From: Mobula birostris
Lineage: Eukaryota
Assembly: GCF_030028105.1 (NCBI RefSeq)
Contig: NC_092383.1
Span: forward strand, 96,867,604-96,931,603
Direction: 5' to 3'
Length of the DNA: 64,000 nucleotides
Position numbers and translations under genes: made by a program. Under the pieces are notes generated by a model. It saw only the letters and a program-made list of their open reading frames with translations, made no database searches and was not told where the DNA came from. Shown here one piece after another: positions 1 to 64,000 of this stretch (position 1 is its first letter; every line of letters begins with the position of its first letter).

Positions 1-407
1 GGGGAGGGATGGAGCCAAGAGCTGGACAGGTGATTGGCAAAGGGGGTATGAGAGGATCATGGAACAGGAGGCCTAGGGAGAAAGAAAGGGGGAGAGGTGA
101 AGCCCAGAGGATGGACAAGGGGTATAGTGAGAGGGATAGAGGGAGAAAAAGGAGAGAGAGAAAAAGAATATGTATATATATATATAATAAATAATGGACG
201 GGGTACGAGGGGGAGGAGGGGCATTAACGGAAGTTTGAGAAATCAATGCTCATGCCATCAGGTTGGAGGCTACCCAGACGGAATATAAGGTGTTGTTCCT
301 CCAACCTGAGTGTGGCTTCATCTTGACAGTACAGGAGGCCGTGGATAGACGTATCAGAATGGGAATGGGATGTGCAATTAAAATGTGTGGCCACTGGGAG
401 ATCCTGC
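1..407 (-). mobile_element. Penelope-like element 3' fragment (GIY-YIG C-terminus and 3' tail), running off the window start
   Basis: DLPVATHFN...LEEQHLIFRLGSLQPDGM is nearly identical to 26225-26640 and matches the PLE endonuclease C-terminus. Confidence 0.8.
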
Positions 408-523
408 CACAGGATACTGTCCAGGGGTTCTGTCCTCAGCCCATCCATGGGGGGTCTGGCATGGTGCATCACTGCAGCATACTCAGTGGGATTAGTCTCC
501 GCAACGACCTCCGGACCAGCAAA
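224..523 (-). CDS. Gene A terminal exon, ITSM TEYAAV plus Penelope-derived C-terminus
   Basis: Acceptor ttcttttgtag, phase 0. FAGPEVVAETNPTEYAAVMHHARPPMDGLRTEPLDSILW continues in frame into QDLPVATHFN...DFSNFR*. Confidence 0.72.
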   Translation of the reverse strand, partial: FAGPEVVAETNPTEYAAVMHHARPPMDGLRTEPLDSILWQDLPVATHFNCTSHSHSDTSIHGLLYCQDEATLRLEEQHLIFRLGSLQPDGMSIDFSNFR

Positions 524-594
524 CTACAAAAGAAACAGAACCTGTCAGCTCTGGCCGATTTAAGGGAAACAGGGACAGGACACACTGTGTCAGG

Positions 595-915
595 AATTCT
601 TGGAGACTGGGAAACATAGCCAGGGAAATAGAGTCCAGGACCCATTCAGGGAGATAGAGACCAGAACACAGAGACAGGACCTGGAGACAGCACACAGAAA
701 CAAGGAGATACAGACTGGGAGCCGTAGACAGGACATCGAGATAGGAAGATACAGACCAGGACCCTGGGACAGGGAGATACAGATGAGGACACAGAGGCAT
801 GGAGATTTAGACAAGGACACGGAAGCAAGGAGATACAGACCAGGACCGGGAGACAAGACACAGAGACAGGGAGATATAGATCAGGACCTAGTGACAGGAC
901 ATGGAGACTGGATAC
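595..915. repeat. Degenerate GA-rich minisatellite (gagatacagaccaggac-like)
   Basis: Recurring ~17-38 nt motifs; expanded in the paralog at 42735-43200. Confidence 0.7.
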
Positions 916-1219
916 AGAGATAAGGACTCTGGAGAGGGGAGACATTGAGACTGGGCACATCGACACGTGACACATGGACACAAAAGACCTGGACATGCAA
1001 AGCGACACACAATGATGGAAACTCAGATCACACAGTCAGCACCAATCAACTGACAAACAATCATACTGACCCAGCATCAACACGGTCTCACTCTCAGTGC
1101 ATTCGGAATGAACTCACTAACTGCCCATCGACACAAATATTAAATCCGCGACTAATCATCGGAAATGTACACACTGGGTGGACCGGGTGTGTGGCGGCAG
1201 AGTACCTCAGTCACTGGAT

Positions 1220-1530
1220 GTGTGTGATGGACAGTGTACCCTAGTGACTGTGTGTGTGAGGGACAGTGTTCCCCAGTGACTGTGTGTGGGGTGACAGTGT
1301 ACCCCAGTAACCGGATGTGTGAGGGACAGTGAACCCCAGTGACTGTGTGTGGGGTGACAGTGTACCCCAGTAACCGGGTGTGTGAGGGACAGTGAACCCC
1401 AGTGACTGGGTGTGGGGTGTCAGTGTGCCCCAGTAACCGGGTGTGTGAGGGACAGTGAACCCCAGTGACTGTGTGTGGGGTGACAGTGTACCCCAGTAAC
1501 CGGATGTGTGGGGACAGTGCACTCAGTGAC
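1220..1530. repeat. 63-bp minisatellite made of two ~31-bp subunits
   Basis: ggacagtg recurs at 1261, 1324, 1387 and 1450; the related array at 48515-48760 has a different organisation. Confidence 0.85.
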
Positions 1531-1791
1531 TGTGCGGTGTGTACAATCCAGGCCTGGAGATCACTGAGGCAAAGTTTCAATTGACTCCTCAGTGGTATGT
1601 GGGATCTTGCTGTGCCCCCGTGTGTGCGCTGCTGAGTTCCGCAGTGGTGGTTGGAATGATCTCCGGTGACGGGGACCTGTGGTTGATCCTGGGATTGTGC
1701 AGATTACATGTAGGCCTTATGTTCAGTCTGCCCCAAGGAGGGAGAGTGACCCGGAGTGACCTCTTTCCAGGGGTAACGTGTCTGTCATTAC

Positions 1792-1880
1792 CCTGTCATT
1801 CCCCTTGGGGGGCTGCCAGACACTGTGATTCTTCTGCATTCTCTGAAGATTTGTGTAAATGATGCCTGTCTCCGCTTGGT
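1792..1880 (-). CDS. Gene A exon 5, cytoplasmic, ITIM IIYTNL
   Basis: Acceptor ttctgtcccacag, 89 nt, phase 1-0, donor AGG|GTAATG; translation (D)QAETGIIYTNLQRMQKNHSVWQPPKGNDR. Confidence 0.8.
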
Positions 1881-2038
1881 CTGTGGGACAGAAAGGAGAG
1901 GTGACAGGATCTGTACTGAAACCATTCCCCACTTTATCTGAGCCCTCTCTCCCACCCCTGTTGTCACCTCCCTGCCCAGCCCCTCTCCCTCCCTCCCCCA
2001 AATACCAGACTCAACGACAGGGTGTCAGATCCACTTGC

Positions 2039-2173
2039 CTTCAGTCCCTGAAGTTACTTCCCTTCCCTCAGGTCTTCTCCTCCGTGTGACCGTGAGGATC
2101 ACTGTGAGAGCAAAGATCAGGAGGGTCCCCATCTTGAACAATCTGATCACCAGGATCACTGCATCTGGCACTG
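2039..2173 (-). CDS. Gene A exon 4, transmembrane segment
   Basis: 135 nt, phase 1-1, CAGCAG acceptor. VILVIRLFKMGTLLIFALTVILTVT followed by an RRRR stop-transfer; donor GAAG|GCAAGT (GC type). Confidence 0.85.
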
Positions 2174-2329
2174 CTGTAACAGAGAGTAGAAGAGGTTTCC
2201 TAATGAATTCAGTCCTCATGCTCCCAGTGACACAGGATTGATGAATTCACTCCATCCCTCCTCAGTCGGAGAAAACTCCCTGTCACCTCAACACGGTCCC
2301 TCAGTACCCTACAATCACCATCACATAAC

Positions 2330-2830
2330 TCCCCTCCAAACCCCACCTCTCCACCCCGCTCCCCTCCCTTCCAGCATCCCTCAGTCCCTCCAATATCCCT
2401 CAGTCCCCTGAGTCTTCATTCTCTCCGATCACTATCACCTCACTGTCCTCCACCCCACCCCTCCCCTCCAATACCCTTCAATCCCTCCATCCCTATTCCC
2501 TCCAATCACCATCAAATCACTCACCTCCAAACCCATCACCTCCCCTCTGATACCCATCAGTCAGCTCATCCCCCATTCCCTCTAATCAACATCGCATAAC
2601 TGACCTGTACCCCACCCCTTCAATACACCTCAGTCCCCTCATCCTCATTCCCTCTAATTAACATAGCATCACTGACCTGCACCCCTTCCCTCCAATACCC
2701 CTCAGTCCCCTCATCCCCCATTCCCTCTAATTAACATAGCATCACTGACCTGCACCCCTCCCCTCCAATACCCCTCAGTCCCCTCATCCCCTATTTCCTC
2801 CAGTCACTATCAGATCACTGCCCTCCAACC
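2330..2830. repeat. C-rich degenerate tandem repeat in the TM-C2 intron
   Basis: Repeated cctcagtcccctcatcccc / ctctaattaacatagcatcactgacctgcacccc units; shorter in the paralog at 49600-49790. Confidence 0.65.
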
Positions 2831-2959
2831 ACTCCTACTCTATGGTGCTCCCAGTGGGACACAAAAGAACAATACTGTTGACGGACACATTTGGAAATGT
2901 TTGTGACAGGAATTAAGGAAATGGTGGAGGAATCAAAACTGTGATTGCCCATCTTCTCA

Positions 2960-3600
2960 AACATAGAAACATAGAAAACCTACAGCACAATACAGGCCCT
3001 TCGGCCCACAAAGTTGTGCCGAACATGCCCTTACCTTAGAAATTACCTTGGGTACCATAGTCCGCTATTTTTCTGAACTCCAATGTACCCGTCCAGGAGT
3101 CTCTTAAAAGACCCTATCGTATACGCTTCCACCACCATCGCTGGCAGCTCGTTCCACGCACTCACCACTCTCTGCGTAAAAAACTTCCTCCTGACATCTC
3201 CTCTGTACCTACTTCCAGACAGCTTAAAACTGTGTCCTCTTGTGTTAGCCATTTCAGCCCTGGGAAAAAGCCTCTGACTATCCACATGATCAATGCCCCT
3301 CATCATCTTGTACACCTCTATCAGGTCATCTCTTATCCTCCGTCACTCCAAGGAGAAAAGGCCGAGTTCACTCAACCTATTCTCATAAGACATGCTCCCC
3401 AATCCAGGCAACATCCTTGTAAATCTCCTCTGCACCCTTTCTATGGTTTCCACATCCTTCCTGTAGTGAGGTGACCAGAACTGAGCACAGTACTCCAAGT
3501 GGGGTCTGACCAGGGTCCTCTATAGCTGTAACATTACCTCTCGGCTCTTGAACTCAATCCCATGGTTGAAGAAGGCTAATGTACCATATGCCTTCTCAAC
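2960..3600 (-). mobile_element. CR1 LINE 3' fragment
   Basis: YKMMRGIDHVDSQRLFPRAEMANTRGHSFKL C-terminal motif and an aacatagaaacatagaa terminal repeat. Confidence 0.85.
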
Positions 3601-3869
3601 AACTCCAGTCTGTATGTATTCTGTCTGACAGGATACTGTAGAGAACCATTTACTTTATCGGCAACCATCATTTTTTGTATTTTATACTCAGGCCTCTGCT
3701 CATATTTGTCAGCACAGCCTGGGTGAGGAACTGCAGTACATTTTGCAGAAGGTCCACACTGAATCAACTGTGCACTGTTGCTGGAGGGAGGGAGTGATTC
3801 GATTGGAGAGAAGGATTATTTCGGATGGCTGAGGCATCGAGTGGTCAGGGAGGTGGAGGCTGAGCTCGA

Positions 3870-4484
3870 GGAGAGGGGTTACTGAGGGCCAATGTGAGGG
3901 AGCTGGATTAAAATCAGTGGTGATACACTTAGTTAGATCCCACTTGGAGTACTGTGCTCGGTTCTGGTCGCCTCACTCACTCCAGGAAGGATGTGGAAGC
4001 CATAGAAAGGGTGCAGAGGAGATTTACAAGGATGTTGCCTGGATTGGGGAGCATGTCTTATGAGAATAGGTTGAGTGAACTCGGCCTTTACTCCTTGGAG
4101 CGACGGAGGATGAGAGGTGACCTGATAGAGGTGTATAAGATGATGAGGGGCATTGATCGTGTGGATAGTCAGAGGCTTTTTCGAAGGACTGAAATGGCTT
4201 ACACAAAGGGGCATCGTTTAAGGTGCTTGGAAGTAGGTACAAGGGGGGTGTTAGAGGTAAGTGTTCAGACAGAAAGTGGTGGGTGCATGGAACTGCCAGC
4301 AATGGTGGTAGAGGTGAATACAGTAGGGTCTTTTCAGAAATTGTTCAATAGGTGCTTGGAGCTTAGAAAAATCGAGGGCTATGCTGTAGGGAATTTCGAG
4401 GCAGTTTCTAGAGTAGGTACATGGTCAGCACAACATTGTGAGTCAAAAGGTCTGTAATCTGCTGTAAATTTTTTATGTTTTTAT
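3870..4484 (+). mobile_element. CR1 LINE 3' fragment
   Basis: IERVQRRFTRMLPGL...RGDLIEVYK motif and a ttttatg tail. Confidence 0.85.
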
Positions 4485-4565
4485 GAAGCTCCTCTACGCT
4501 GTCCTGTCTCACACTCCTGGGACAGGGGATCTAACTAAATTGCAACTTCTTCCTCTGACACTCAC

Positions 4566-4847
4566 GACATGTGTCCAGATTACAGACGTCCCCCAGCCAG
4601 ACCTGTGCGGTGTCCTCACTGATAGGGTTTCTGGCCTCACACCTGTACACAACATCCTCCATCTCTGCTGTGCAATCAACCCGTATCGTCTTTCCGTCTT
4701 TCCAGATGTGATGGCTGCTGTTGTCTCCTGTAACTTCTCTCCACCAACTAAAGTTGGTGGGGTTGCCAGAGGTCACGGAGCAGGTCAGGGTGACGATACA
4801 GATTCCAGTGATGTTCTGAGGCGTGATGTTTACTCCTGACACGGGCT
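4566..4847 (-). CDS. Gene A exon 3, IgC2 domain
   Basis: 282 nt, phase 1-1. (E)PVSGVNITPQNITGICIVTLTCSVTSGNPTNFSW...YRCEARNPISEDTAQVWLGDVC has four Cys, and the VYEPVS junction and NP-I/V-S motif typical of SLAM C2 domains. Confidence 0.93.
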
Positions 4848-4882
4848 CTGAGGGTGTGAGAAAGAGATGAAAGATGAGTAAA

Positions 4883-7800
4883 TATCCAGCGGGCAACGTC
4901 GGAGTGGGTTGAGAAGTGAGAGGGTGCAGCATGAAAGGGCTTTGGCTCAACGGGCTTTGATGGAGACGGGAAGAGGCTTCCTGCAACCGTTGAGTCTCAT
5001 AGTAACGGAATAAGTTACAGTCTTCTGGTATTTGGTACGAACAGTAGCATTAGAGGTATGCATCTAGGATTAGTGTTGTGCTTGGAGTGCCAGATGTGGG
5101 GACCCTGGGAGACCCCCAGCCTCCCCAAGGATTACATCTGCACCAGGTGCACTGAGATGAGGCTTCTGAAGGACCGTGTTAAGGTGCTGGAGATGGAAAT
5201 AGATGACCTTCGGCTAATTAGGGAAAGTGAGGAGGTGATAGATACTACCTATAGAGAGGTAGTGGATAGCACCCCATGACAGTCCCCCTCAGAAATCAAT
5301 ATATCGTTTTGGATTCTGTTGAAGAGGCAGACCTGACAAAGGAGGACCACAGTGAACGAGACTCTAGCATTCCACCCAGTGCCAAAATCAAGAGAGCAAG
5401 AAGAAATGCGGTAGTTGTAGGGGACTCCATCGTAAGGGGGACGGACAAGAGATTCTGCGAGCCGGACAAGGATACCCGGATGGTGTGTTGCCTCCCTGGT
5501 ACCAAGGTACGGGATGTCTCAGATCGAGTCCAGAGTATTCTGAGGAGAGAGGGCGAGCAGCCGGAAGTCTTGGTACATGTTGGTACCAATGACAGAGACA
5601 GAAAAAGAGAGGAGGTCCTAAAGAAAGATTACTGGGAGCTAGGAAGAAAATTGAAAAGCCGGACCTCCAGAGTAATAATATCAGGATTGCTACCTGAGCT
5701 GCACGCTACTGATGATAAGAATAGCAAAATTAAGCGGATGAATGTGTGGCTAAGTAACTGGTGCAGGGGGCAGGGTTTCAAATTCTTGAATCATTGAGAT
5801 CTATTTTGGGGAAGGTATGACTTGTACAAAAAAGATGGATTACACCTGAACTCAAAAGGTACTAATATCCTGGCAGGATTGTTTATTATAGCTATTAGGG
5901 AGGGTTTAAACTAAGTTGGCAAGGGGAAGGAAACCAAGGTGTTAGGGTCGAGGAAGAGGAAAATAGAAATAAGTCAAAAATACTGTTCAGCAAAGATGGT
6001 AAGAAGGACAGGCTGGTGAATATACAGGGTAATTTGCTGCAAAATAGAAATATAGCAAAATCGACAACAGATACTGATCTAAATGTACTGTACTTAAATG
6101 CACGCAGCATTAGAAATAAAGTGGATGACCTTGCTGCACGGCTGCAGGTTAAAAGATATGACATTGTGGCCATCACCGAGTCATGGCTAAATGACAGATG
6201 TGATTAGGAGCTGAATATCCAAGGATACACAGTGCATAGGAAAGATAGGAAGGTGGTAAAGGGGGTGGCGTGGCCCTGATGGTAAGTAACGATATCAAAT
6301 CAATAGAAAGAAGGACATAGGATCAGAAGAGGTAGAATCCTTATCGGTAGAATTAAGAAATGGCAAGGGTAAAAAGACACTAATAGCAGTTATATACAGG
6401 CCTCCAAACAGCAGTCGGGATGTGGACTACAAGTTGCAGCTGGAAATAGAAAAAGCGTGTCAGAAGGAAAATGTCAAGACAATTATGGGGGATTTTAATA
6501 TGAAAGTGGATTGGGAAAGTCGGAAAAGTAATGGATCTCAGGAGAGGGAGTTTGTAGAATGCCTACAGGATGGCTTTTTGGAGCAGCTTGTCCAGAAGCC
6601 CACCAGGGAACTGGCTGTTTTGGATTGGGTGCTGTGTAACGAACCTCAGGCGATTAGGGAGCTGAAGGTAAAGGAACCCCTTGGAAGTAGTGATCATAAT
6701 ATGATTGAGTTCAGTTCCAAATTTGAAAAGGAGAAGCTGGTATCAGGTGTATCGATATTTCAGTGGAACAGGGGAAATTACAGTGGTATGAGAGAGGAAC
6801 TGGCCCAAGTCAATTGGAAAAGTAAACTAAATGGAGGGACGGCAGAGCAGAATTGGATGAAATTCCTACAAGAAATAAGGAAAATGCAGGAAAAATATAT
6901 TTCAAGAAAAAAGAAAATCATGAATGGAAAAATGGCACAAATGTGGCTAATGAGAGAGGTTAAGGCAAAAATAAAAGCAAAAGAAACGGCGTACAAGGAA
7001 GCAAAAATTAGTGGGAAAAATGAAGACTGGAAGACCTTTAAAAACTTACAGAAAGAAACTAAGAAAGTCATTAGGAAAGAAAAGATGAATTATGAAAGGA
7101 AGTTGGTGATTAACATAAAAAAGGATACTAGGAGTTTTTTTAAATATATGAAGAGTAAAAGAGTGACAAGGGTAGATATGGGACCGATTGAAAATGATGC
7201 TGGAGTAATTATAATGGATAACAAAGAGATGGCAGAGGAACTGAATGAATATTTTGCATCAGTCTTCACAGTGGAAGACATGAGCAATATACCTGATAGC
7301 CAGAGGTATCAGGGAATAGAATTAGGTACAGTCAAGATAACTAGATAGAAAGTGCTTGGGAAGCTAAGTGGACTAAGAATAGATAAGTCTCCTGGCCCGG
7401 ATGAGGTGCACCCAAAGGTTCTGAAGGAGGTGGCTTTGGAGATTGTGGAAGCATTGGAAATGATCTTCCAGGAATCAATAGACTCTGGCATGGTTCCAGA
7501 GGACTGGAAGGTCGCAAATGTAGTTCCACTATTTAAGAAAGGAAGGAGGCAGCAAAAAGACCTATTACAGACCTATTAGTCTGACATCGGTGGTTGGAAA
7601 GATATTGGGGTCAATCCTCAAGGACGAGGTTATGAAATACCTCGAGGTGCATGACAAGATAGGCCGAAGCCAGCATGGTTTCATGAAGGGAAGATCCTGC
7701 CTTACCAACTTATTGGAATTTTTTGAGGTAATCTCGAATAAGATTGACAAGGGAGAGGCTGTGGATGTTGTGTATTTGGATTTTCAAAAGGCCTTCGATA

Positions 7801-8969
7801 AGGTGCCGCATATGAGGCTGCTTAACAAAATGAGAGCCCATGGAATTATAGGAAAGAATTGAAATGGATGGAGCATTGGCTGATAGGCAGAAAGCAAAGG
7901 GTGGGAATAAAGGGATCCTATTCTGATTGGTTGCCGGTTACTAGTGGTGTTCCGCAGGGGTCGGTGTTGGGGCCGCTTCTTTTTACGATGTATATCGATG
8001 ATTTGGATTATGGATTAAATGGTTTTGTGGCCAAGTTTGCGGATGACACCAAGATAGGTGGAGAAGCAGGAAATGTTGAAGAAACGGAAAGGTTGCAGAG
8101 AGACTTAGTCAGTTTAGGAGAGTGGGCAAAGAAATGGCAGATGGGATACAACGTTGACAAATGTACAGTTGTAATTTCGGAAGAAGAAATAATCGGGCAG
8201 ATTATTATTTAGATGGGGAGAAAATTCAAAAATTGGAAGTGCAAAGGGACTTGGGGGTCCTCGTGCAGGATACCCTAAAAGGTTAACCCCCAAGTGGGAT
8301 TGGCGGTAAGGAAAACGAATGCTATGTTGGCGTTCGTTTCAAGAGGAATAGTGTCTAAGAGTAAGGAGGTGTTGATGAGGCTCTATGGGGCATTAGTGAG
8401 ACCTCATTTGGAATACTGTGTGCAGTTTTGGGCCCCCTATCTTAGAAAGGATACATTGATGTTGTAGAGAGATCAGAGAAGATTTACGAGGATGATTCCT
8501 GGAATGCAGGGGCTAACATATGAGGAGCATCTGTCGGCTCTTGGATTGTATTCATTAGAGTATAGAAGAATGAGAGGGGATCTCATAGAAACGTTTCGAA
8601 TGTTGAAAGGGTTGGACAGAGTAGATGTGGAAAGGTTGTTTCCCTTGGTGGGTGAGTCCAGGACAAGAGGCCATAGTCTTAGAATTAGAGGGTACCCAGT
8701 TAAAACAGAGATGAGGAGAAATTTTTTTAGCCAGATGGTCGTGGATTTGTGGAATTCATTGCCACATATGGCTGTGGAGGCCCGATCATTGAGGGTGTTT
8801 AAGGAGGAAATTGACAGGTATCTAATTAGTCAGGGTATCAAGGGATATGGGGAAAAAACCGGAAAATGGAACTAGATGGGTGAATAGTTTAGCTCATGGG
8901 GGAGCTGCGGAGCAGACTCGATGGGCCGAATGGCTTACTTCTGCTCCTTTGTCTTGTGATCTTGTGATC
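4883..8969 (+). mobile_element. Essentially full-length, inactivated CR1 (ORF1 zinc finger/coiled coil/SGNH esterase; ORF2 EN-RT)
   Basis: ORF1 CxxC...CxxC, GDSIVRG and VHVGTND; EN YLNARSIRNK; RT LDFQKAFDKVPH, PQGSVLGP, FADDTK; several stops and frameshifts; (tcttgtga) tail; TAAA on both sides; the empty site is visible in gene B at ~52290. Confidence 0.95.
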
Positions 8970-9544
8970 TAAAGGAGATTCTTGTGGACACCTCGATCCC
9001 CATCTCCCCCATCCCATCCCCAACAGTCCAGAGTAAACTTCAAGCAACGCCCACCTCATTTTTACCCAACGATCCCTCACCCTTCTGTTCATCACTTGTT
9101 GCTGGTGGAAGTTTCCACGTGCTGAGCCCCCTTTCCCAAGCACAATCCACAAACACAATCGACAAACTCTCCATCATGTCCTGTTTATAGCACTCTATTC
9201 CAGGAATTCTCTCCATTTCCATGTCTTTTGTTCCTCCTGTGTGTGGCCCCGGCATCCCTTCGAAACCTGAGTGAGCCCCAGCCCTGACCTGCCCTAATCT
9301 GGTCCAAAACAAGACACAGCCCACTCTATTCTGTCAGTCTCTCAATCTCCACTCTGCCTGCCCAGATTATGATGACGTCTTGAGATCCTGAAACCTGAGC
9401 CATTTCTTACGTCTCTGTTCTCACACCCTCTCCCACCGAAAGCAAGGAGAAGATTCCTCTGACCCGATCCTTCTACCCCACTGGTCTCCACCTTCAGTGC
9501 ATCAACATCTATGCTTCCTGGCCCTTTCAATGAGACTCCATTGA

Positions 9545-10230
9545 ATCATAGAGTATTGCAGTGCCAAAACAAACCCTTCAGTCCATCTAGTCCATACCTA
9601 GTCCCATTGATACTTATCTGGACATCGCCTTCCACATTCCTCCCAATATTTATCCAAATTTCTGTTAGACATTGAAATCGAACCTGGTTCCAACACTTCC
9701 ACCTGCACCTTGTTCCACCCTCTGAGTGAAGAAATTCCTCCACCTTCCCCTATAACTCTGGTCCTCGAGTCCTGATACTCTGCACTCTTTCAATCTTATT
9801 GATACCTTTCCTGTACGTAGGTGACCAGAATTGCACAAATACTGCAAATTAGGCCTCTCCAAGGTCTTGTACAATTTCAACATAACATCCCAACTCCTGT
9901 ACTCAATAATTTGATTTATGAAGGCCAATGTGCCAAAAGCTTTTTTTAATGACCCTATCGACCTGAGACACTACTTTCAAGAAATTATGTTTCTGCATTC
10001 CCAGATCTCTCTATTCTACCGCACTCTTCAGTGCCCGACTGCTCATCATGTACGTTCCACGCTGGTTTACTTCCCAAGGGTCAAGGCTTCGTACTCGTCT
10101 GCATGAAATTCAACCTGACAATTTTTGGCTCATTATTCCTGCTGGTCCCAATCCTGCTACAGGCTTTGATAGTCTTCTTAACTGTCCACTATACCCACAA
10201 CTACTGTCATCCGCAAATTTGATGATCCAC
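9545..10230 (-). mobile_element. Deleted, old CR1 fragment shared by both paralogs (also 52865-53420)
   Basis: IEYRSWDVMLKLYKTL...RPNL motif. Confidence 0.7.
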
Positions 10231-10784
10231 TTACATTCCACTCCCTTCCCTCTTTCTTACATATTTTGACCAGTTTCTCCCTGAGTAACACCTCGCTCTG
10301 CTCTTCTGCCAAACCCACAACTCCCACCACTCCATGTCCCACTCCACTTTCTGGACATCCAGAGGAGGGGGGCTTCATATGAACTTTCACAGTTTCCCTT
10401 CCCTCCATGCAGGGAACCAAAAGCTGAAACAGAGATTGACGAGCACTCCCAATGCAGTGAACTGCACTCAGTGTCCACACGGTGGCCTCCTCTCCACTGA
10501 GAAACCAGGCACAGTGTCACTGACCACCTTGAGGGACATCTCAGTTCAGGCACAATTGTAACTCAGAAGTTCTAGTTGCTGTCACTTTGATTCTCCATCC
10601 TGCTCCCACTCTGACACACTGATTCTGACTTCTGACACTATTCCAGTGAGACCAATGTATAGACAAGGGCCCATCTCCAGCTGGATGAGATGCAGAACTT
10701 GTGGCTCTCCCTCCTTTATAGAGCTGATGTTCAGAACAGGTTCATTGTATGAAAAGTTTTGTTGACTACTGTCTGATTCAGAGA

Positions 10785-26167: not shown

Positions 26168-26216
<49 letters not shown>

Positions 26217-26224
26217 CACTGAGA

Positions 26225-36195: not shown

Positions 36196-36200
36196 TTTTT

Positions 36201-50455: not shown

Positions 50456-50481
50456 GTTTTGTGTCTGATATTACCCCCGCT

Positions 50482-54825: not shown

Positions 54826-55146
54826 CGTACACCTCCAGTCGCACTGTTGTTTTACTTTCAGCTCCTGAACTTGCAGCTGTAAACATCACCTGATAATCAC
54901 CAGAGTCCTCTCTCCGTAGATCATGGATTTCCAGACTGACGTTCCCAGGATGAAAGGTTACCCTGTTCTTGTACTGCTCATTACTGTAGTAGCTGATGTT
55001 CCCATTCGAGTACTTCACAATCCTGATTCTGGGCGATACCCAAATCCAATGAACCTCATCGTCCGGTCTGACTGGGATCCCAGAAGGTAAGGAGACTGAG
55101 TGTCCCTGAGCTCCGGTCACCGTGGTAGGGGGAGCCTCAATCCCAG
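54826..55146 (-). CDS. SLAM/CD2-like receptor gene B, IgV exon
   Basis: 321 nt paralog of 12330-12650 with the same splice sites and an open frame; 27 nt differences by hand count. Confidence 0.92.
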
Positions 55147-55421
55147 CTGAGGAGACAAGACAAGACAGTCCGTAGGTGAGGTCAGTGATAGGAAGAGGAA
55201 TCAGACCTGAGAAAATCAAAGACACAGGAGGAAGCCAAGCGGCCCATCATGTTGTTCCCAGCCCCATGAGACAGACAGCACAAAGTCAGTGTTGTTTCAT
55301 GCCAAGACACTTCATCAGGACTCCAGACTCTCTGTACCCGGCACTCAGAAATGAAGTTGCAACCTGCAGCCAGATATCAATGGTCAGGTGGGGGGGTGGG
55401 GTGGTCACAGATATTTTCTAG

Positions 55422-58400
55422 TGTCACGAACTCCGTGACAGGAATAAAGAACTAGCAGAGATGGAAAACACTTTGGCGTCCAGTATTGCTATAAACTAAT
55501 AATATTTATTAGTAACTACACAATACAGTAATATAAATGTAAATAGATCAAACAGGTTAGCAATGATTATATATATATATAAAAATAAGTATCAGTAAGT
55601 GTGGAAATATATGTATGAAAAACCAAGCTTCTTTAAGTCTAGGGGTAAAAAGATACAGTCTTACGATGATGAGTAAAGTTCAGTTCAGTTCAGTTCGTGG
55701 TATTCAGTTGAGTAGTGATGGAGAGAGAGAGAGGGAGAGATTTGAATCTTCAGATGAGCTGATGCCGTCGATCTTCTCGTTGTCCTTCGAAATCCTTTCA
55801 AAGTCACCGACTGTGACCTTAACAAAGGGGACTGGTTTTCTGTGGTGGAGCTATGCCCCAGGCCAGGGTGGACACATGGACAACTCCCCACCAGTCAACC
55901 CCTTTCCTCTTTTCACATGCAGAGCGATGGATCGATCCGCCTGATCGATCCTCCAACACCCACTTTTTCTGCAGGCACAAAAATGCTCATTCAGTGTCCA
56001 AACATGTGTCTGAGGTCTGTATCATCTGACCTCCTATTTATCTTCTCGTGCTGAGCATCAATTGTCACTCAAATAATCCCTCCTTCCTCTCTCTGTGAAG
56101 AAATGCAAGCAGGCAAAAAGTCCCAGAAGAAGTATCAACAACCTGCCAAAAATCATAACGTCGTGTGTCCATTAAATAACACTGCCTTCGGTCACCATAG
56201 CAAATTACGTGCTGCTTGGTGCTGTCTCCAACTCCAGCAGAAATCCAACAGTTAACCAGTTCTTTCTCGTTCCTTAAAGTGACAGTCCCACAGAGAGTCT
56301 TTGTCTCTCTCTCTCTTTTACAAACAAGCTATCGGTAGTAAATAACTCTCTCTCTCTCTTTTCAAAAGCACAGTTCATAGGGGTACTTCAGGGTCCCCTC
56401 ACACTCCCCTTCCTCAGAGGAAAAACAATTGATGAAGATTTTTTTTTGTCTATGTGTAAATTACAGAGTTTGAAACAATACAGGTAAAATCATCAGATAA
56501 CTGAGCAAAAATGTGTTCGACTTCCAACTTAATATCTGAATAACTAATCAGCTATAATATTGTCAATACCTTTCACATGTTTGATTTTTAAGTCACATTC
56601 CTGCAATATCAGATTCCAATTTAACAATCTTCTATTCTTAGCCTTCATCCTAATTAGAAACATCAACAGATGTGTGGTAAACCATATATACATGTTGTAA
56701 CTGGGTTACCTGTCTGGACACGCTCCTCTGCTGACTGCCCCTGTGGCTCCTCCCACAGACCCCTGAATAAAGGCGATTTCACCATTGCTGCTCCTCCTCA
56801 GTCCAGGGGCAGACACTCAGCATGAAGGTCACGTCTTACTGCGAATAAAAGCCTTTCAGCATTTACCCTACTTCCAGTCTTTTGGAATTATTGAAGGTGC
56901 ATCACCATGTAAACCACAAGTGGTCTCTGGGCAACAGAAAGAGATGGAGGTCTCTGAACATAGACCTCAAAATGTTGTAAAGCCAGAATAAGTGCTAGTA
57001 ATTCCTTTTCAACAGATGAATATTTTCTCTGGTGTACATTAAAGTTCTTTGAGAAATAAGCTACTGGACGTTCAATGTCATTAACTCCTTCCTGTAACAG
57101 TACTGCCCCAGCAGCTTCGTCACTAACGCCTGTTGCTATAGAAAATGGCTTTGAAAAAATCAGGTGCTTTGAGCACAGGATTATAACACAGGATGGTTTC
57201 CAGACATTTAAACGCCTACTGGCAAAGGTCATTCCATACAAATCTTTCACATTTCCCCAGGAGTTTTGTTAGGGAGAGAGCAATGTCAGCAAAGTTCTTA
57301 CAACACTTACAGTAATACCCAACCATTCCTAAAATCCTTCTCAAAGTTTTCCTGTCAGTCAGAACAGGAACCTCAGCAATAGCTTGAACATTGGACTGCA
57401 CAGAAGCCAGCTGGCCTTGGCCCACCACGTAACCCAGATATGTAACTGTGGCGTGGCCAAACTCACTTTTAGCGAGGTTCACAGTAAGATTGGCCTTGGA
57501 AAGTCTGTCAAACAGTTTTTCTACCACTGCAATATGCTCTTCCCAGGTGTCATTCAAGACCACTAAATCATTGATATAAACCCCTGTGCTCTCTTACCCT
57601 CCAATCACAGAATTGATCATTCTTTGAAATGTCCCGGCTGCATTTTTCATCTCGAAGTGTAAGACATTGTACTCATACAGTCTAGACGGTGTCACAAATG
57701 CTGATATCTCTTTAGCCCTCTCTGTTTAAGGAACACCCCATCATTCTTTTAACAAGTCAATCTTAATAGGTATTCAGCCGTCCCCACTCTGTCAATACAA
57801 TCATCCATTCTCTTTCCTTGTTCTTTCTTGTTTCTAATTCCTTTTTCAACCAAGTCAGACACTTCAGACTTTAACTGAGCTTTAACACAAGGTTCAGAAT
57901 CCTGTGAACTCACAGGTACTTCCACAACCTGAACACAGTCAATCGGAACAGCTGCCTCTTCTGGGCTGTCATCACTTGTCCCAGTTTCAAATTCAAGGTC
58001 ACCCCGAGCCTCACAGCTATTCTCTGGCAAACTCTTTTCTGGAGTAAACTCAACCTCGTGGGTTAAACCAACTTCGTCTGCTTTCTTATCAAACCCCTGC
58101 AAGGTAGTGGCATCCTCTGCATCTGGGTATCCTTACCTCATCAGCAACACAACTTTTCAATTCATCACACAAAACAAGCCCTTCCAAGCTGTAAAAATCA
58201 TCAGCGTCTGACACTAAACCTCTTTGCTGCCACCTCTCCTTTTTAAACTGTCTATGTCTTCCTGCCACGTGATCTTCACATTTGCATTTCTCCCTTTTGA
58301 GCTGTCTCTGTCTTCCTGCCTCTTCTCTCTGTCTTGCTGTCTCTCTAGCTTCTTTCTTGAATTGTTTTAATTTCAATTCATGCTCCATTCTTAACTTTTC

Positions 58401-59580
58401 CAACTGAAGCTGAAGCTCATCCTCAGCAGATTCACCTTCCATGAACAACTCTAACGCCTCCTCATCAAACATTCCCTTATCTACATAATGCTGGGCTATT
58501 ATCGTCTGCATCTGAGCTTTCCTCATTATAGTGGTCACCTTTAGTTTTAACTTTTGAGCAATTCCCAACAGCACAACCCTTGTAGCATCATCCAACGCTT
58601 CTGGGGTTGGTTCCAACATAAACTCCACAACACTAACGTCCATTTCTGTTGTATTTCCACACAACCAAATCAAAAGGGATTTTCCCTCAATCAGTTCATA
58701 CCAGCCTCCTGAACAATTTGTTCATATCGCGGATGAAGGCCCCAATTCATGTCACGAACCCCGTGATGGGAATAAAGAACCAAACAGAGATGGAAAACAC
58801 TTTGGAGTCAAGTATTGTTATAAACTAATAATATTTATTAGTAACTACGCCATACAGTAATATAAATGTAAATAGATCAAACAGGTTAGCAATGATTATA
58901 TATATAAGTAAGTATCAGTATGTGTGGAAATATATTTATGAAAAACCAAGCTTCTTTAAGTCTAGGGGTAAAAAGATACAGTCTTACGATGATGAGTAGA
59001 GTTCGGTTCAGTTCAGTTCGTGGTATTGAGTTGAGTAGTGATGGAGAGAGAGAGAGGGAGAGATTTGAATCTTCAGGTGAACTGACGCCGTCAATCTTCT
59101 CGTTGTCCTTCGAAATCCTTTCAAAGTCACTGACTGTGACTTTAACAAAGGGGACCAGTTTTCTGTGGCGGAGCTATCTCCCAGGCCAGGGTGGACACAT
59201 GGACAACTCCCCACCAGTCAACCCCTTTCCTCTTTTCACCGCAAGAGCGATGGATCGATCCGCCTGGTCGATCCTCCAACACCCACTTTTTCTGCAGGCA
59301 CAACAATGCTCATTCAGTGTCCAAACATGTGTCTGAGGTCTGTATCATCTGACCTCCTATTTTATCTTCCCGTGCTGAGCATCAACTGTCACTCAAATAA
59401 CTCCTCCTTCCTCTCTCTGTGAAGAAATGCAAGCAGGCAAAAAGTCCTTGAAGAAGTATCAACAACCTGCCAAAAATTATACCATCGTGTGTCCATTAAG
59501 TAACGCCCCTCGGTCACCATAGCAACTTATGAGCAACTTCAAAAGCACAGTTCATAGGAGTACTTCAGGGTCCCCTCACA
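55422..59580 (-). mobile_element. Internally deleted Gypsy element (LTRs 58750-59580 and 55422-56403), TSD CTAG
   Basis: Paired LTRs; CTAG on both sides; degenerate Pro-type PBS next to 58750; gag N-terminus at 58089-58673; RT and RNase H remnants (PVAYFSK...YSSVEKELLA); PPT at 56404-56415. Confidence 0.9.
56673..56904 (+). mobile_element. Solo LTR nested in the 55422 element, related to the LTRs of the 60718 element
   Basis: TGTGGTAAACC...GGTGCATCA matches the reverse complement of 60718-60946. Confidence 0.8.
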
Positions 59581-60717
59581 CTAGAAAAGTTTGGGGTGAG
59601 ATACTGGGATACCCTCACTGTGTGTGTGCAGGGGTCAGGAGGTCAACTGATCGGACTCAGGGTGACGAACACTCAGCTGGAATTGTCCCTGGATCTGGCT
59701 CTCCTAAAGAGGTGGTTCAGCACAACTTGAGCCGTCTCTGGGAAATGTCTCACAGGCTGCACCTCCCGTCCCCAGGGGGTTCCTTGCACCAGCTGCTCCT
59801 GTACACTCTGCACTGTCTGACCTTCACCTGTTGCCTGGACATCCAGTGTCAGGTGGTGAGGGTGGAGTCCCAGTTAGAGTCTGTCTGTGAGGACTCTGCC
59901 ACTCCTCATCAGACCTTGGAGCAAAGAGGGTGAACAGTCCAATGCTACAATTTCTGTTGTCCGAGAGGGTCAGAATTCCCTGTTTAGATGGATAGAGGTG
60001 TCTAGTGAGCTGCTGTCAGCAGCCTGTGCCCCACCAGGGGTGATTGGCTTAAGAAGGGTGTAAGAGAATCTAGCTGGATGTGGTAGTGGAGATGGTGTCT
60101 TGCCTGACCTACCGGACCAGGCTTCCTGTTGAATAGTTCACATCTATACATTGTCGTCAATCTCCTTTTGTCCATGTTCTCCCTGTTCCAACTGCTCCCA
60201 GTCACCCATTGACCAGATAATCCTGTAGCCAGCTTATCCCCATGGCACTCTGTCAGAGACACCCCAACACCCGCTTTCCCTATAGTTTTTTCTTCCTCTC
60301 CACAAACGTCTTAATCTTTGTATTATTACCCAACCCACAAACACATCATAACATGGTTAACGGGATCAGGGAGGAGTGACTCAGAGTCTGGTGTGGCTTT
60401 CAGTTCCTGTGGCACTGGCATTAGTACTGGAGAAGGAGAGCACCGTTCCACTGGGACAGACTGTGATCAGACTTCCACTGAATCCAATCACGAGGGAGGT
60501 AGACTGAATTTAAATTCGATAAAACTGTGTTGGGAGGAGGACCCCAATGCTGGGAAATCTGGAAGGTTGAAGAGGAGCAACAAGGAAGGGGAAAGAGGTC
60601 TCGATAACCAGGAGGAGAACAAACTGAATTTGTCTAAATCTAAACAAACTACTGAAGATCATATGTGTGAGTTCACTCTGCAGGAAAGTGATCATGATGC
60701 TTTTGTCATGGTGTCAG

Positions 60718-62649
60718 TGAAGCACCTTCAATTACTCCAAAAGACTGAGGTTTGGTAAAATACTGAAGGGCTTTTATTCGCTGTACAATACGACCTCCAC
60801 AGTGAGTGTCTGCCCCCGGACTGAGAGGGAGGGGCAAGGCGAACACCTTTATACAGGACTCTGTGGGAGGAGCCACAGGTGCAGTCAGCAGAGGGGTGTG
60901 TCCAGACAGGTAACCGAGTTACAACATATATACATGGTTTACCACATTCACCCCTCCTTTTTTTTAAAAAGAGTCCCGCGAGGTGAAGTGACTGACAATA
61001 TTTACAAGAAGTATATTTACAGTTCAAGTCTATCAGGTGGTCGAGTCCGTTGCTGTGATCTACGTAGCACCGGCGATGGCAGTTGTGCTGGCTCTGGCCT
61101 GACTTCAGGTGCCAGCACATTAGGCGTCGGTAATCCCTCGTGCGTGTGCGTCGCGTCCAGTATGGGAGTGCCGTGTGGTGTCTGTATAGGGCTTGGGGTG
61201 CACGGTGTCTCGTAGGTACATACATTGGTGGGTACGGGGTCAATAGTTACCACAGAGTGTTCAGGGTAGGGGCCCGGAGCTCCTGCGGGCGCCAGGTCGC
61301 GGATGGAGACCGTGTCCTCCCGCCCATCAGGTAAAACCACGTAGGCATACTGGGGGTTCGCATGAAGTAAGTGAACCCTCTCGACTATCGGGGAGTACTT
61401 ATTGCTCCTCGCATGTTTCCGGAGCAGCACTGGCCCCGGGGACGTCAGCCAAGATGGTAGGGTGGTTCCAGTGATCAATTTTCACTGGCGTGGTGAGGTG
61501 CCCCGTGAGCACCTGTTGGTTGTAGGCGGTGAGAGGTGGCGCCGACCAAGATGGCCGCCCCCATGTCTCGCACGTGGTGGTGGCGTGCAGGGAAGATGGC
61601 GGCAGGCAAGATGGCGACCCCCACGTCTCGCATACGGCGCTGCTCGATCCCGCTCGCGGTTTTGACTTACAGACCTTGGCGAAGTAGCCCTTCTTTCCGC
61701 AGCTGGAGCAGGTAGCTTGTCGGGCCGGGCAGCGTTTCCGGGGGTGCTTCTCCAGTCCGCAGAAGTAGCACTTCGCGGGCTCACGACTGGCGGCAGCCGA
61801 GGTCGATTTGCCGGCAGTTTGTGGGGTCTGCGGCGCCCACGAGGCCATCGGGGGATTGCGTGCCTGGAGAGCCTTGGAGTTATGCAGAGCGGCCTCCAAT
61901 GTATCAACCAGCTCGATCGCCGAACTTAGGGTAAGATCGGCTTTTTCCAGCAGCTGCTGGCGCACGTACACTGACCTGGTCCCCGTGACGAAGGCGTCTC
62001 TCACTAGGAGTTCTGCATGCTGCGCCGCCATCAGCTCCTGGCAATTGCAGGCCCACACGAGTGTCTGTAGGGCCCGGACAAACTCAGCACTCGATTCCCC
62101 GGGGTGTTGTTGCCGTGTCGCTAAGCGATGCCGAGCATAGACGCTGTTTATCGGCCGTAGGTATTGTCTTTTGAGTGCGTTTATCGCGCCGTCGTAGTTC
62201 AGCTGGTCTCTGATCAGCGAATAGACCCGTGGACTGACCCTGGAGAGTAGAACTCTGCGCTTCGCTACGGGGTCGGTCGCTTTAATCTCCTCTAGATACG
62301 CTTCGAAGCAGGCCAGCCAGAGTTTGAAAGCGTTTCCAGCTTCAGGTGTTTGCGGATTGAGGTCTAATTTTTCTGGTCTCAGGGCCTGCTCCATGTTTTA
62401 AAACGTACAGCGAATAAAATTGAAGCACCTTCAATTACTCCAAAAGACTGAGGTTTGGTAAAATACTGAAAGGCTTTTATTCGCTGTACAATACGACCTC
62501 CACAGTGAGTGCCTGCCCCCGGACTGAGGGGGAGGGGCAAGGCGAACACCTTTATACAGGATTCTGTGGGAGGAGCCACAGGCGCAGTCAGCAGAGGGGT
62601 GTGTCCAGACAGGTAACCGAGTTACAACATATATACATGGTTTACCACA
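60718..62649 (-). mobile_element. 1.9-kb Gag-only LTR element (229-bp LTRs 62421-62649 and 60718-60946), TSD GTCAG
   Basis: LTRs differ at 5 of 229 nt; 331-codon gag ORF; integrase C-terminal remnant; PPT at ~60947-60966; the empty site with a single GTCAG is at ~14847 in gene A. Confidence 0.93.
61399..62394 (-). CDS. Gypsy (Mag-like) Gag with two zinc knuckles
   Basis: ATG-initiated 331 aa ORF; CYFCGLEKHPRKRC and CSSCGKKGYFAKVC (second knuckle His to Tyr). Confidence 0.82.
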   Translation of the reverse strand: MEQALRPEKLDLNPQTPEAGNAFKLWLACFEAYLEEIKATDPVAKRRVLLSRVSPRVYSLIRDQLNYDGAINALKRQYLRPINSVYARHRLATRQQHPGESSAEFVRALQTLVWACNCQELMAAQHAELLVRDAFVTGTRSVYVRQQLLEKADLTLSSAIELVDTLEAALHNSKALQARNPPMASWAPQTPQTAGKSTSAAASREPAKCYFCGLEKHPRKRCPARQATCSSCGKKGYFAKVCKSKPRAGSSSAVCETWGSPSCLPPSSLHATTTCETWGRPSWSAPPLTAYNQQVLTGHLTTPVKIDHWNHPTILADVPGASAAPETCEEQ

Positions 62650-63129
62650 GTCAGAACAACAAAGACCTCAACATAATCAAGACAGAAGAACTCGTTGTTG
62701 ACCCAAGGAAGTGTGTGTGTGTAGACAACCCTGTCCTGATCAAAACAGCTACTGTAGAGATGGTTGACAGATTTGAAGCAGACATCCTTATCAACAGCAT
62801 AGTCTCCTGGTCTCTCCAACTCACACAGTGACCAAGAAAGCACGTCAACCCAAATTGAATAAAAGTGATCAATACAAAGAGAGTTTAACAATCCCCGTGA
62901 CCCCAAATGAGACACTGAACACAAAGTGAAAACCCACTTTGTTCAAAGACAAACAATTAGACATGAAAAGTTCACAATCGAAGGAACACTACATACCCGT
63001 GAGGTGACACTGAGAAAATACAATCCACATACAAACTGATAAAATCCCTTTCTTCTTTAAAAACAACCCATAGCTCTGACACATACGTCTTACTCAAATT
63101 TCCCATTGTGTGGTACATGTTCTTTCTCT

Positions 63130-63181
63130 CTCTCGCACACACACACACTCAGAGACAGAAACACCACAAACTGACACACAG

Positions 63182-63226
<45 letters not shown>

Positions 63227-63340
63227 ATTGCGCATGCTTACACACATGTGCGGACTCACACACGCACAGACGCACACACAAATGCGCACACGTGCACAGA
63301 CACAGACACAGAGGCACAGACACACTCACATGCAAACACT
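63130..63340. repeat. (CA)n-rich microsatellite, much longer than in the paralog (15330-15385)
   Basis: Direct reading of the sequence. Confidence 0.85.
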
Positions 63341-63350
63341 CACACTCTCT

Positions 63351-63613
63351 ATCACCTATCACCTGTCCAGCTCCTGGCTCCATCCCTCCCCCTCCTGTCT
63401 ACTCCTATCATTTTGGATCTCCCCCTCCCCCTCCAACTTTCAAATCCCTTACTCACTCTTCCTTCAGTTAGTCCTGACGAAGGGTCTCAGCCTGAAACGT
63501 CGACTGCACCTCTTCCTAGAGATGGTGCCTGGCCTGCTGCGTTCACCAGCAACTTTTATGTGTGTTGCTTGAATTTCCAGCATCTGCAGAATTCCTGTTG
63601 TTTGTGTTTTTAA
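63351..63613 (+). mobile_element. 263-bp 5'-truncated Penelope-like insertion with 13-bp TSD
   Basis: Matches 26605-26855; actcacactctct at 63338-63350 and 63614-63626; absent from gene A at ~15385. Confidence 0.82.
63470..63505 (+). ncRNA. Minimal type I hammerhead ribozyme (Penelope type)
   Basis: Stem I AGUC/GACU, core CUGACGA, stem II AGG/CCU, GAAAC-GUC with palindromic ACGU; predicted cleavage after 63501. Confidence 0.78.
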
Positions 63614-64000
63614 ACTCACACTCTCTGCTCTGTTGTTCCATTGTGTGATCTGGGTTCACAAACACTTTGCCGAGCTCGTGTCAACATGACGAGCAGGAGC
63701 AGGAAGCAGACGTGCTACCATTGAACCAGACAACATGTTCAAATGATCTTGCTGAAACATTTTCTTGCTATTTTCCTTGATCTCCTTAATATCTAGAAAT
63801 CTATCAATGAAAGAAGAATTTCCAGATCACCGGAGAATCCCAGTGATTTACCACAGTATGCCGGCTGGCTTCGTAATGGCCTGGTATGGGAACACTATGT
63901 ATTTGAATGGAAAATCCTACAAAATGTACTGAATATGGTCCAGTACATCATGGATAAAACCTTCCCAGCCACTGAAAGCAGCTACATGAAACATTGCCAT

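What the first reader, a model, noticed from the sequence alone, without database searches (positions are those of the whole stretch)
224..64000. Tandem cluster of SLAM/CD2-family receptors in a probable cartilaginous fish, with diverging signalling tails
Seen: a phase-consistent six-exon gene A (55+321+282+135+89+300 nt = 393 aa plus stop), a ~90% identical paralog B about 42 kb away, and a third decayed C2 exon between them. Established: the V (no disulfide) + C2 + tyrosine-motif layout defines the CD2/SLAM family. Inference: this is a birth-and-death paired-receptor locus whose copies differ mainly in their tails.
Basis: partly seen in the sequence, partly recalled or inferred. Interest (0 to 1): 0.7.

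Follow-up and report, generated by a model that had tools for sequence, protein, structure and literature searches.

The report
Manta ray SLAM-family receptor gene pair
Two neighbouring copies of an immune-cell surface receptor gene of the CD2/SLAM family sit in this giant manta ray DNA; they are real and already computer-annotated, so this is a correct but fairly ordinary find whose main value is better gene models.

Summary
The observation largely holds. On the minus strand lie two tandem paralogs, 42.5 kb apart and 91% identical in coding DNA, plus a decayed C2 exon at 29620-30028. Exon 5 is 1880-1792, not 1910-1822. From base 408 downwards the last exon is a repeat inserted in the old stop codon.

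The genome is Mobula birostris. Both genes are already RefSeq models, both truncated: XP_072133949.1 "SLAM family member 7-like" and XP_072133766.1 "CD48 antigen-like".

CD2/SLAM membership is well supported:
- the V domain has no disulfide;
- four C2 cysteines align with those of SLAMF6;
- the best solved-structure matches are CD48, SLAMF6, CD2 and CD58;
- TxYxx[VI] motifs recur through the family.

A tree does not firmly separate the family from CEACAM-like proteins.

Spliced RNA contigs confirm the exon joins, including a GC donor. They come from a sister gene, and gene A's own RNA was not seen.

Birth-and-death evolution is supported. "Paired receptor" and "differ mainly in tails" are only partly supported.

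The scan found SLAM-family genes before on other DNA of this genome (s1-145345, s1-145348).

The parts
18890..18944 (-). Gene A exon 1 (55 nt): start codon and signal peptide MNTRHLLISCWLTLCASL, donor GTAAGT
   Evidence: 17 of 18 residues match the N-terminus of Hypanus P0009. Identical to the start of RefSeq XP_072133949.1. That model's CDS span of 16,920 bp fits 18944..2025.
12330..12650 (-). Gene A exon 2: V-set Ig domain without the canonical cysteine pair
   Evidence: Pfam V-set E 1e-12. Best PDB sequence match is CD48, E 4e-5. Splice sites AG/GTGAGT.
4566..4847 (-). Gene A exon 3: C2-type Ig domain with four conserved cysteines
   Evidence: Pfam ig/Ig_3. The cysteines align with those of SLAMF6. 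RNA joint 4566>2173 in the sister gene's contigs.
2039..2173 (-). Gene A exon 4: stalk, transmembrane helix (with R and K near its outer end), RRRR stop-transfer; GC donor (GCAAGT)
   Evidence: The joint 2039>1880 has GC..AG ends on the gene strand. RefSeq's model reads through this donor to ...SGTEGKWI*.
1792..1880 (-). Gene A exon 5 (corrected borders): DQAETGIIYTNLQRMQKNHSVWQPPKGNDR, with the ITIM-like IIYTNL
   Evidence: RNA joints 2039>1880 and 1792>523. RefSeq paralog models use the same borders.
409..523 (-). Gene A exon 6, ancestral part: FAGPEVVAETNPTEYAAVMHHARPPMDGLRTEPLDSIL, with the ITSM TEYAAV
   Evidence: 100% identical to the C-terminus of sister XP_072135114.1, which stops after ...DSIL. 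The sister's RNA contigs leave the window at 409.
224..408 (-). Gene A exon 6, repeat-derived part: the old stop codon is interrupted (TGG instead) and the frame runs on for 61 codons (Trp plus 60 repeat codons) to the repeat's own stop at 224-226
   Evidence: 1-407 is 90% identical to 26640-26227. The peptide is 92% identical to the ORF end at 26228-26407. Pfam finds no domain. Atlas gives only a weak GIY-YIG lead.
54826..55146 (-). Gene B V exon
   Evidence: 100% identical to RefSeq XP_072133766.1.
51977..52261 (-). Gene B C2 exon (one extra codon compared with A)
49311..49445 (-). Gene B TM exon, GC donor (GCGAGT); Arg at two positions of the helix
49060..49148 (-). Gene B exon 5, with the ITIM-like IIYTDL
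42590..42643 (-). Gene B last exon: a +1/-2 indel pair shifts the frame, giving FVGPEVVCRLTPLTVKQ* with no ITSM
   Evidence: The paralog XP_072135118.1 has the same shifted tail.
29620..30028 (-). Relic of a third gene: the 5' half of a C2 exon plus the intron upstream of it, with stops
   Evidence: blastn against the C2 regions of A and B, E 9e-20 and 8e-32.
411..15765 (.). Duplication unit carrying gene A (without its exon 1 region)
   Evidence: Self-comparison.
42531..64000 (.). Duplication unit carrying gene B, enlarged by retroelement insertions
   Evidence: Self-comparison.

Best explanation
The window holds two tandem, recently duplicated members of a CD2/SLAM-family receptor group that has expanded in rays. 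It also holds a relic exon of a third member. Each gene encodes a type I membrane glycoprotein: signal peptide, a V domain without a disulfide, a C2 domain with two disulfides, one membrane helix and a tyrosine-motif tail.

By analogy with SLAM receptors, I infer the following. The V domain binds itself or a related protein on another leukocyte. Src-family kinases then phosphorylate the tail. The phosphotyrosines recruit SH2 proteins.

Gene A carries an ITIM-like motif (IIYTNL) and a switch motif (TEYAAV). It could therefore recruit phosphatases or SAP-type adaptors. Gene B lost the switch motif through an old frameshift and keeps only the ITIM-like motif, so it should be purely inhibitory.

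Gene A's stop codon was hit by a repeat insertion. This adds 61 foreign codons and removes the old 3' end. Its own RNA was not seen, so it may be on its way out.

Shown here: the gene structures, the fold family, the motifs, the duplication, and splicing in the sister gene. Inferred: the ligand, the signalling partners, and expression of A and B.
For: Exon structure and conserved splice sites in both copies.

Spliced RNA contigs of 1233 and 1330 nt join C2>TM>exon 5>exon 6 at 4566>2173, 2039>1880 and 1792>523.

Fold: the five best PDB matches are CD48, SLAMF6, CD2, SLAMF6 again and CD58, with TM by target 0.72-0.77. In Swiss-Prot AFDB, SLAMF1, 5, 6, 7, 8, 9, 2B4, CD2 and CD48 fill most of the top 30.

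Profile against PDB: SLAMF6 matches over both domains at E 8.6e-17, and all four C2 cysteines are aligned.

The best non-chondrichthyan proteins for the family profile are Ly-9, SLAMF5 and SLAMF6.

23 of 47 family models carry TxYxx[VI], often two of them about 36 residues apart.

Both reading frames are intact. Chance of no stop in either copy is about 0.056. Flanking DNA has 10.7 gap openings per kb, yet 816 coding nt show no frameshift.

RefSeq identity of both genes.
Against: Single-sequence searches rank CEACAM6 and CEACAM1 above CD48 and SLAMF6.

The Pfam SLAM and 2B4 models are below threshold.

The tree joins the family to mammalian SLAMF only through a weak, very short branch (92/70, length 0.037).

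An ITIM-plus-ITSM tail also resembles CEACAM1-L (my own knowledge).

The RNA contigs carry the sister gene's letters: 14 mismatches and 2 gaps in the TM exon. No contig shows gene A's own letters at 4624, 4791 or 2092-2143. A-specific TM words are absent from the putative RNA runs.

dN/dS of 1.19 fits relaxed constraint as well as diversifying selection.

The SAP docking test gave no verdict.
Confidence: 0.75

Rival explanations
1. The genes belong to a CEACAM-like family, or to a common ancestor group of CEACAM and CD2/SLAM, rather than to SLAM proper. CEACAM1 also has a disulfide-free N domain, C2 domains, and a tail with an ITIM plus an ITSM-like motif.
For: phmmer of the sister's ectodomain ranks CEACAM6 (1.7e-8) and CEACAM1 (8.6e-7) above CD48 and SLAMF6. 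Per-domain profile scores for a coelacanth 'CEACAM6-like' protein (84 bits) equal those of SLAMF5 (85 bits). The tree branch separating the families is weak. A few RefSeq names in the family are CEACAM5-like or HEPACAM2-like.
Against: CEACAM1 lacks the first and last of the four C2 cysteines in the profile alignment, while SLAMF6 has all four. CEACAM1b is only rank 21 by structure, behind CD48, SLAMF6, CD2 and CD58. Most automatic names are SLAM, CD48 or Ly-9. Two spaced ITSMs on separate exons are the SLAM pattern.
Confidence: 0.12
2. Gene A, and perhaps B, is no longer a working gene. It would be a recently disabled copy in a birth-and-death cluster whose frame simply has not yet decayed.
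For: A repeat sits in gene A's stop codon and replaces its 3' end. No RNA contig carries A's own letters in four runs of the same species. dN/dS is about 1.2. Gene B's intron 5 and the stretch upstream of its V exon carry kilobases of retroelements. A relic exon lies next door.
Against: Both copies keep every splice site and an open frame, where neutral decay would be expected to have broken them. The tissues of the RNA runs are unknown, and contigs drop rare transcripts. B-type tails recur in another annotated gene, so that form is stable.
Confidence: 0.35
3. The pair is a classical activating/inhibitory receptor pair. One partner would signal through a charged membrane residue and an ITAM adaptor, the other through an ITIM.
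For: Both membrane helices hold basic residues: A has R and K, B has two R. Reading through the GC donor gives a four-residue tail, as RefSeq models it in three species.
Against: Both genes encode the same ITIM-like motif when spliced. The only RNA seen uses the GC donor. No read-through RNA was seen. The basic residues lie near the outer end of the helix, where they may merely snorkel (inference).
Confidence: 0.15

Closest known systems
Mammalian SLAM family receptors (SLAMF1, 3, 5, 6, 7; CD244)
   Same: V domain without a disulfide, followed by a C2 domain with four cysteines, a single TM and a tail with TxYxx[V/I] motifs on separate small exons. The genes are clustered in tandem. These are the best structural matches. 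The family definition is as given in PMC12506779.
   Different: There is no one-to-one orthology: all shark and ray members form their own clade (100/99). In the Mobula/Hypanus subgroup the first ITSM has become the ITIM-like IIYT[ND]L. Binding of SAP or EAT-2 is untested.
Expanded CD2/SLAM family of Xenopus (Guselnikov et al. 2011, Immunogenetics 63:679, cited in PMC4536121)
   Same: A lineage-specific expansion of CD2/SLAM genes with diversified signalling ends: ITSM, other motifs, or charged TM segments.
   Different: It is a different vertebrate class and an independent expansion. The Xenopus NxxR membrane motif is not present here.
CD48, CD2 and CD58
   Same: These are among the five best solved-structure matches, with the same two-domain ectodomain. 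RefSeq calls gene B 'CD48 antigen-like'.
   Different: CD48 is GPI-anchored and CD2 has a proline-rich tail. These genes have a TM and tyrosine motifs.
CEACAM1
   Same: N domain without a disulfide, C2 domains, and a long tail with an ITIM and an ITSM-like motif (my own knowledge). Sequence scores are similar.
   Different: Its C2 domains carry one disulfide, not two. Its structural rank is lower.

Membership tests
CD2/SLAM family | Membrane-distal V-set domain lacking the canonical intradomain disulfide | tested here: met
   V-set E 1e-12. No cysteine is conserved in the V part of the 24-sequence alignment. Gene B's V has no cysteine at all; gene A's single cysteine is off register.
CD2/SLAM family | Membrane-proximal C2 domain with conserved cysteines forming two disulfides | tested here: met
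   C142, C148, C195 and C214 are invariant or nearly so. All four align with cysteines of SLAMF6 (2IF7). CEACAM1 lacks the first and last. The pairing itself was not checked in coordinates.
CD2/SLAM family | Closest structures are family members | tested here: met
   PDB ranks 1-5 are CD48, SLAMF6, CD2, SLAMF6 again and CD58. Most of the Swiss-Prot AFDB top 30 are SLAMF, CD2 or CD48, with CLMP/CAR interleaved. The model was of the sister protein, whose V is identical to gene A's.
CD2/SLAM family | Cytoplasmic ITSM, TxYxx[V/I] | tested here: met
   Gene A has TEYAAV. Gene B has none, because of the frameshift. 23 of 47 family models have one or more.
CD2/SLAM family | Family-specific Pfam models (PF06214 SLAM, PF11465 Receptor_2B4) | tested here: inconclusive
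   Hits at E 0.007-0.01 and 0.00085-0.0098, all below the curated cut-offs. Precomputed PF11465 and PF06214 hits exist on several relatives.
CD2/SLAM family | Phylogenetic grouping with SLAMF/CD2 to the exclusion of other Ig families | tested here: inconclusive
   The branch separating amphibian CEACAM and teleost 'HEPACAM2' from SLAMF plus the shark/ray clade has support 92/70 and length 0.037. Long branches were flagged. CD2, CD58, CD48 and SLAMF1, 7, 8 and 9 were not in the tree.
CD2/SLAM family | Recruitment of SAP/EAT-2 or SH2 phosphatases to the phosphorylated motif | not testable with these tools
   The docking job with human SAP gave no verdict. This needs biochemistry.
CD2/SLAM family | Conserved synteny with the SLAM or CD2 regions | not testable with these tools
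   The window holds no other cellular gene.
CEACAM family | C2 (A/B-type) domains with a single disulfide; N domain of CEACAM type | tested here: not met
   The C2 here has four conserved cysteines. CEACAM1b is structural rank 21.
Paired activating/inhibitory receptors | Near-identical ectodomains; one partner with an ITIM, the other with a short tail and a charged TM residue that binds an ITAM adaptor | tested here: inconclusive
   The ectodomains are 82% identical. Both spliced forms have the ITIM-like motif, and both TMs have basic residues. Short-tail forms exist only as RefSeq read-through models and were not seen in RNA.

The most novel reading that the evidence does not exclude
The weak GC donor after the membrane exon could act as a switch. 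It is present in A and B and is used in the sister gene's RNA. Splicing there would give an inhibitory receptor with a tyrosine-motif tail. Reading through would give a receptor with a four-residue tail (G-K/E-W-I, then a stop) and basic residues in the membrane helix, which might couple to an activating adaptor. The four codons and the stop recur in Mobula birostris, M. hypostoma and Hypanus models. One gene would then encode both halves of a paired receptor.
Probability: 0.15. Interest if true: 0.55.

Novelty: new member of a known kind. Interest (0 to 1): 0.3.

Why it matters
The result shows that CD2/SLAM-type receptors with switch motifs existed in cartilaginous fishes and expanded there independently, separately in sharks and in rays. 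This pushes that signalling system back to the base of jawed vertebrates.

Practically, it corrects two RefSeq models. Both stop at the unspliced GC donor and so miss the signalling tail. One of them also starts in a retroelement.

It gives a clean example of how such clusters turn over:
- tandem duplication;
- a change from ITSM to ITIM;
- a frameshift that removes a motif;
- a repeat landing in a stop codon;
- a leftover exon.

In three searches of the open-access library I found no paper on SLAM-family genes of sharks or rays. The genes are already named by automatic annotation, and the principle is known from Xenopus.

Tried and rejected
- Docking of gene A's ITSM segment (first 40 residues of exon 6) on human SAP with complex prediction gave a score of 0.18 and no verdict. 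It counts neither for nor against binding.
- Pfam on the repeat-derived 60 residues and on the copy at 26114-26407 found no family. The Atlas gave only unnamed clusters, plus one cluster with GIY-YIG in 15% of members at score 0.88. 'Penelope' therefore remains a recollection, not a result.
- Rfam at gathering threshold and at E up to 0.5 found no hammerhead or other credible RNA.
- A search for a 55-nt start exon just upstream of the V exons found nothing signal-like. The real exon 1 was found only with a stingray homologue's N-terminus.
- I suspected that XP_072135115.1 was a chimera of gene A's first two exons with a neighbour's later exons. I rejected this because its gene spans only 12.7 kb and has no neighbour within 10 kb.
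- The look-up of encoding contigs returned no DNA for any ray record. Synteny and donor conservation in other species could therefore not be checked.
- Three literature searches for SLAM/CD2 in cartilaginous fish found nothing relevant.
Full report
WHAT IS THERE. The window has no gaps. It is dominated by retroelements.

A self-comparison shows a direct segmental duplication, 411-15765 against 42531-64000. Identity is 88-97% in blocks, interrupted by insertions.

All receptor exons lie on the minus strand. Gene A is:
- exon 1, 18944-18890;
- V, 12650-12330;
- C2, 4847-4566;
- TM, 2173-2039;
- exon 5, 1880-1792;
- exon 6, 523-224.

Every acceptor is AG. The donors are GT, except a GC donor after the TM exon (GCAAGT). 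The introns are phase 1 up to exon 5 and phase 0 after it.

Gene B has V 55146-54826, C2 52261-51977, TM 49445-49311 (GCGAGT donor), exon 5 49148-49060 and a last exon at 42643-42590. Its exon 1 must lie beyond base 64000.

A third C2 exon fragment, with part of its upstream intron, lies at 30028-29620. It is 67-74% identical to the live copies and carries stops.

WHOSE GENOME, AND IS IT ANNOTATED. A search of 1.8 billion protein representatives with the V exon found dozens of ray and shark proteins. They are named SLAM family member 5/7/8/9-like, CD48 antigen-like or Ly-9-like.

XP_072133949.1 of Mobula birostris ('SLAM family member 7-like', 278 aa) is identical to gene A from the start codon through the TM exon. 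Its CDS span of 16,920 bp equals window 18944..2025.

XP_072133766.1 ('CD48 antigen-like', 291 aa) is gene B.

Both models read through the GC donor and end four codons later (...SGTEGKWI and ...SGTEGEWI), so they lack the signalling tail. Gene B's model also starts with 30 residues taken from a retroelement ORF at 58526-58437.

RNA. Four runs of the same species were laid on 1-4900. They are guessed to be RNA, and the species match rests on DNA runs under the same organism code that hold the exon.

Contigs of 1233 and 1330 nt join 4566>2173, 2039>1880 (GC..AG on the gene strand) and 1792>523. It moves exon 5 by 30 nt at both ends.

The contigs differ from the window by 6 letters in C2, 14 letters and 2 gaps in TM, 7 letters in exon 5 and 1 letter in exon 6. 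They leave the window at 409.

They therefore match the sister gene XP_072135114/5. That protein has a signal peptide and V identical to A, C2 97% identical, a divergent TM and the C-terminus ...LDSIL. Its locus is a separate one of 12.7 kb.

No contig shows gene A's own letters. A-specific words of the TM exon are held by DNA runs but not by the putative RNA runs. Gene A's own expression is thus not shown.

TAILS. In the wider family about half of the models carry TxYxx[VI]. Typically there are two, about 36 residues apart.

In the Mobula/Hypanus subgroup the first motif reads IIYT[ND]L, which is ITIM-like. Gene A keeps the second motif as TEYAAV.

Gene B has a +1/-2 indel pair in its last exon and ends FVGPEVVCRLTPLTVKQ*. 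The annotated paralog XP_072135118.1 has the same shifted tail, so this ITIM-only type is older than the last duplications.

In gene A the sister genes' stop after ...DSIL is replaced by TGG. This falls exactly where a repeat begins: 1-407 is 90% identical to 26640-26227. The frame then runs on for 61 codons (Trp plus 60 repeat codons) to the repeat's own stop.

The repeat's peptide looks to me like the end of a Penelope-type endonuclease. Pfam does not see this and the Atlas gives only a weak lead.

FAMILY. The V domain has no conserved cysteine pair. The C2 domain has four conserved cysteines.

A profile of 24 family members matches SLAMF6 over both domains (E 8.6e-17), with all four cysteines aligned. 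It also matches CD48/CD2 (1e-15), CD2 (5e-15) and CEACAM1 (1e-15), and CEACAM1 lacks two of the four cysteines.

An AlphaFold model of the sister protein has pLDDT above 90 over most of the ectodomain. Its five best solved-structure matches are CD48, SLAMF6, CD2, SLAMF6 again and CD58. CEACAM1b comes at rank 21. SLAM-family entries dominate the Swiss-Prot AFDB list.

Against this, single-sequence scores favour CEACAM slightly, and the Pfam SLAM and 2B4 models stay below threshold.

In my tree all shark and ray members form one clade (100/99), which splits into a shark clade and a ray clade. Genes A and B, with four other manta genes, form a manta-only clade (100/98). The link to mammalian SLAMF rather than to CEACAM-like proteins rests on a short branch with support 92/70.

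I therefore file the genes under CD2/SLAM with about 75-80% confidence. I see no one-to-one orthologue of any mammalian member.

SELECTION. A and B are 90.9% identical in coding DNA and 81% in protein. dN/dS is 1.19 overall, 1.35 in V and 0.78 in C2.

Both frames are nevertheless intact. Simulated neutral change leaves both copies free of stops in only 5.6% of trials. Homologous DNA, mostly non-coding, carries 10.7 gap openings per kb, while 816 coding nt carry none that shift the frame.

This fits genes kept open while their amino acids change freely, as is common for immune receptors. It does not prove present function.

VERDICT. CD2/SLAM membership and birth-and-death evolution are supported. 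'Paired receptor' and 'differ mainly in tails' are only partly supported.

The genes are already computer-annotated, though with truncated models. Similar genes of this genome were reported earlier in this scan. The nearest published parallel I could trace is the Xenopus CD2/SLAM expansion. Interest is modest.

Noticed in passing
window 58437-58526 (-), inside ORF 58089-58673: The first 30 residues of RefSeq's gene B model (MRKAQMQTIIAQHYVDKGMFDEEALELFME) come from a retroelement ORF lying upstream of gene B's V exon. This looks like an annotation artefact, and the paralog model XP_072133767.1 starts in the same way.
   Followed up: partly
window 43365-44149 and 47389-48165: A pair of direct repeats, 94.7% identical, brackets plus-strand gag/pol-like ORFs at 44586-47050. 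It is probably an LTR retrotransposon inside intron 5 of gene B.
   Followed up: no
window 60718-60950 and 62421-62653: Direct repeats, 97.4% identical, flank a 331-aa ORF with a zinc-knuckle-like motif (61399-62394, minus strand). This is a young LTR-type insertion that is absent from gene A's unit.
   Followed up: no
window 36200-37867 (-) and 5399-8973 (+): A 555-aa open reverse-transcriptase ORF (Pfam RVT_1, E 1e-33) of a LINE, and a 77-78% identical, broken copy in intron 2 of gene A.
   Followed up: partly
window 1-490, 2953-3608, 3937-4264: Repeat segments with RNA-contig depths of 10^4-10^5 in all four manta runs. These repeat families are heavily represented in the transcript assemblies.
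   Followed up: no
window 63338-63626: Another first-stage note places a minimal hammerhead ribozyme here. Rfam found nothing there, either at gathering threshold or at E up to 0.5.
   Followed up: partly
window 18890-18944 against Hypanus XP_059806617.1: The signal peptide is 17/18 identical between manta gene A and a stingray homologue, while the ectodomains are only about 73% identical. Gene A and its sister gene also show a mosaic: signal peptide and V 100% identical, C2 97%, the TM helix segment about 70%, and the last exon 100%. This suggests gene conversion between paralogs.
   Followed up: partly
window 1181-1534 and 42740-43184: Tandem repeats inside intron 5 of both genes, seen as self-hits 63-128 nt out of register at 78-89% identity.
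   Followed up: no
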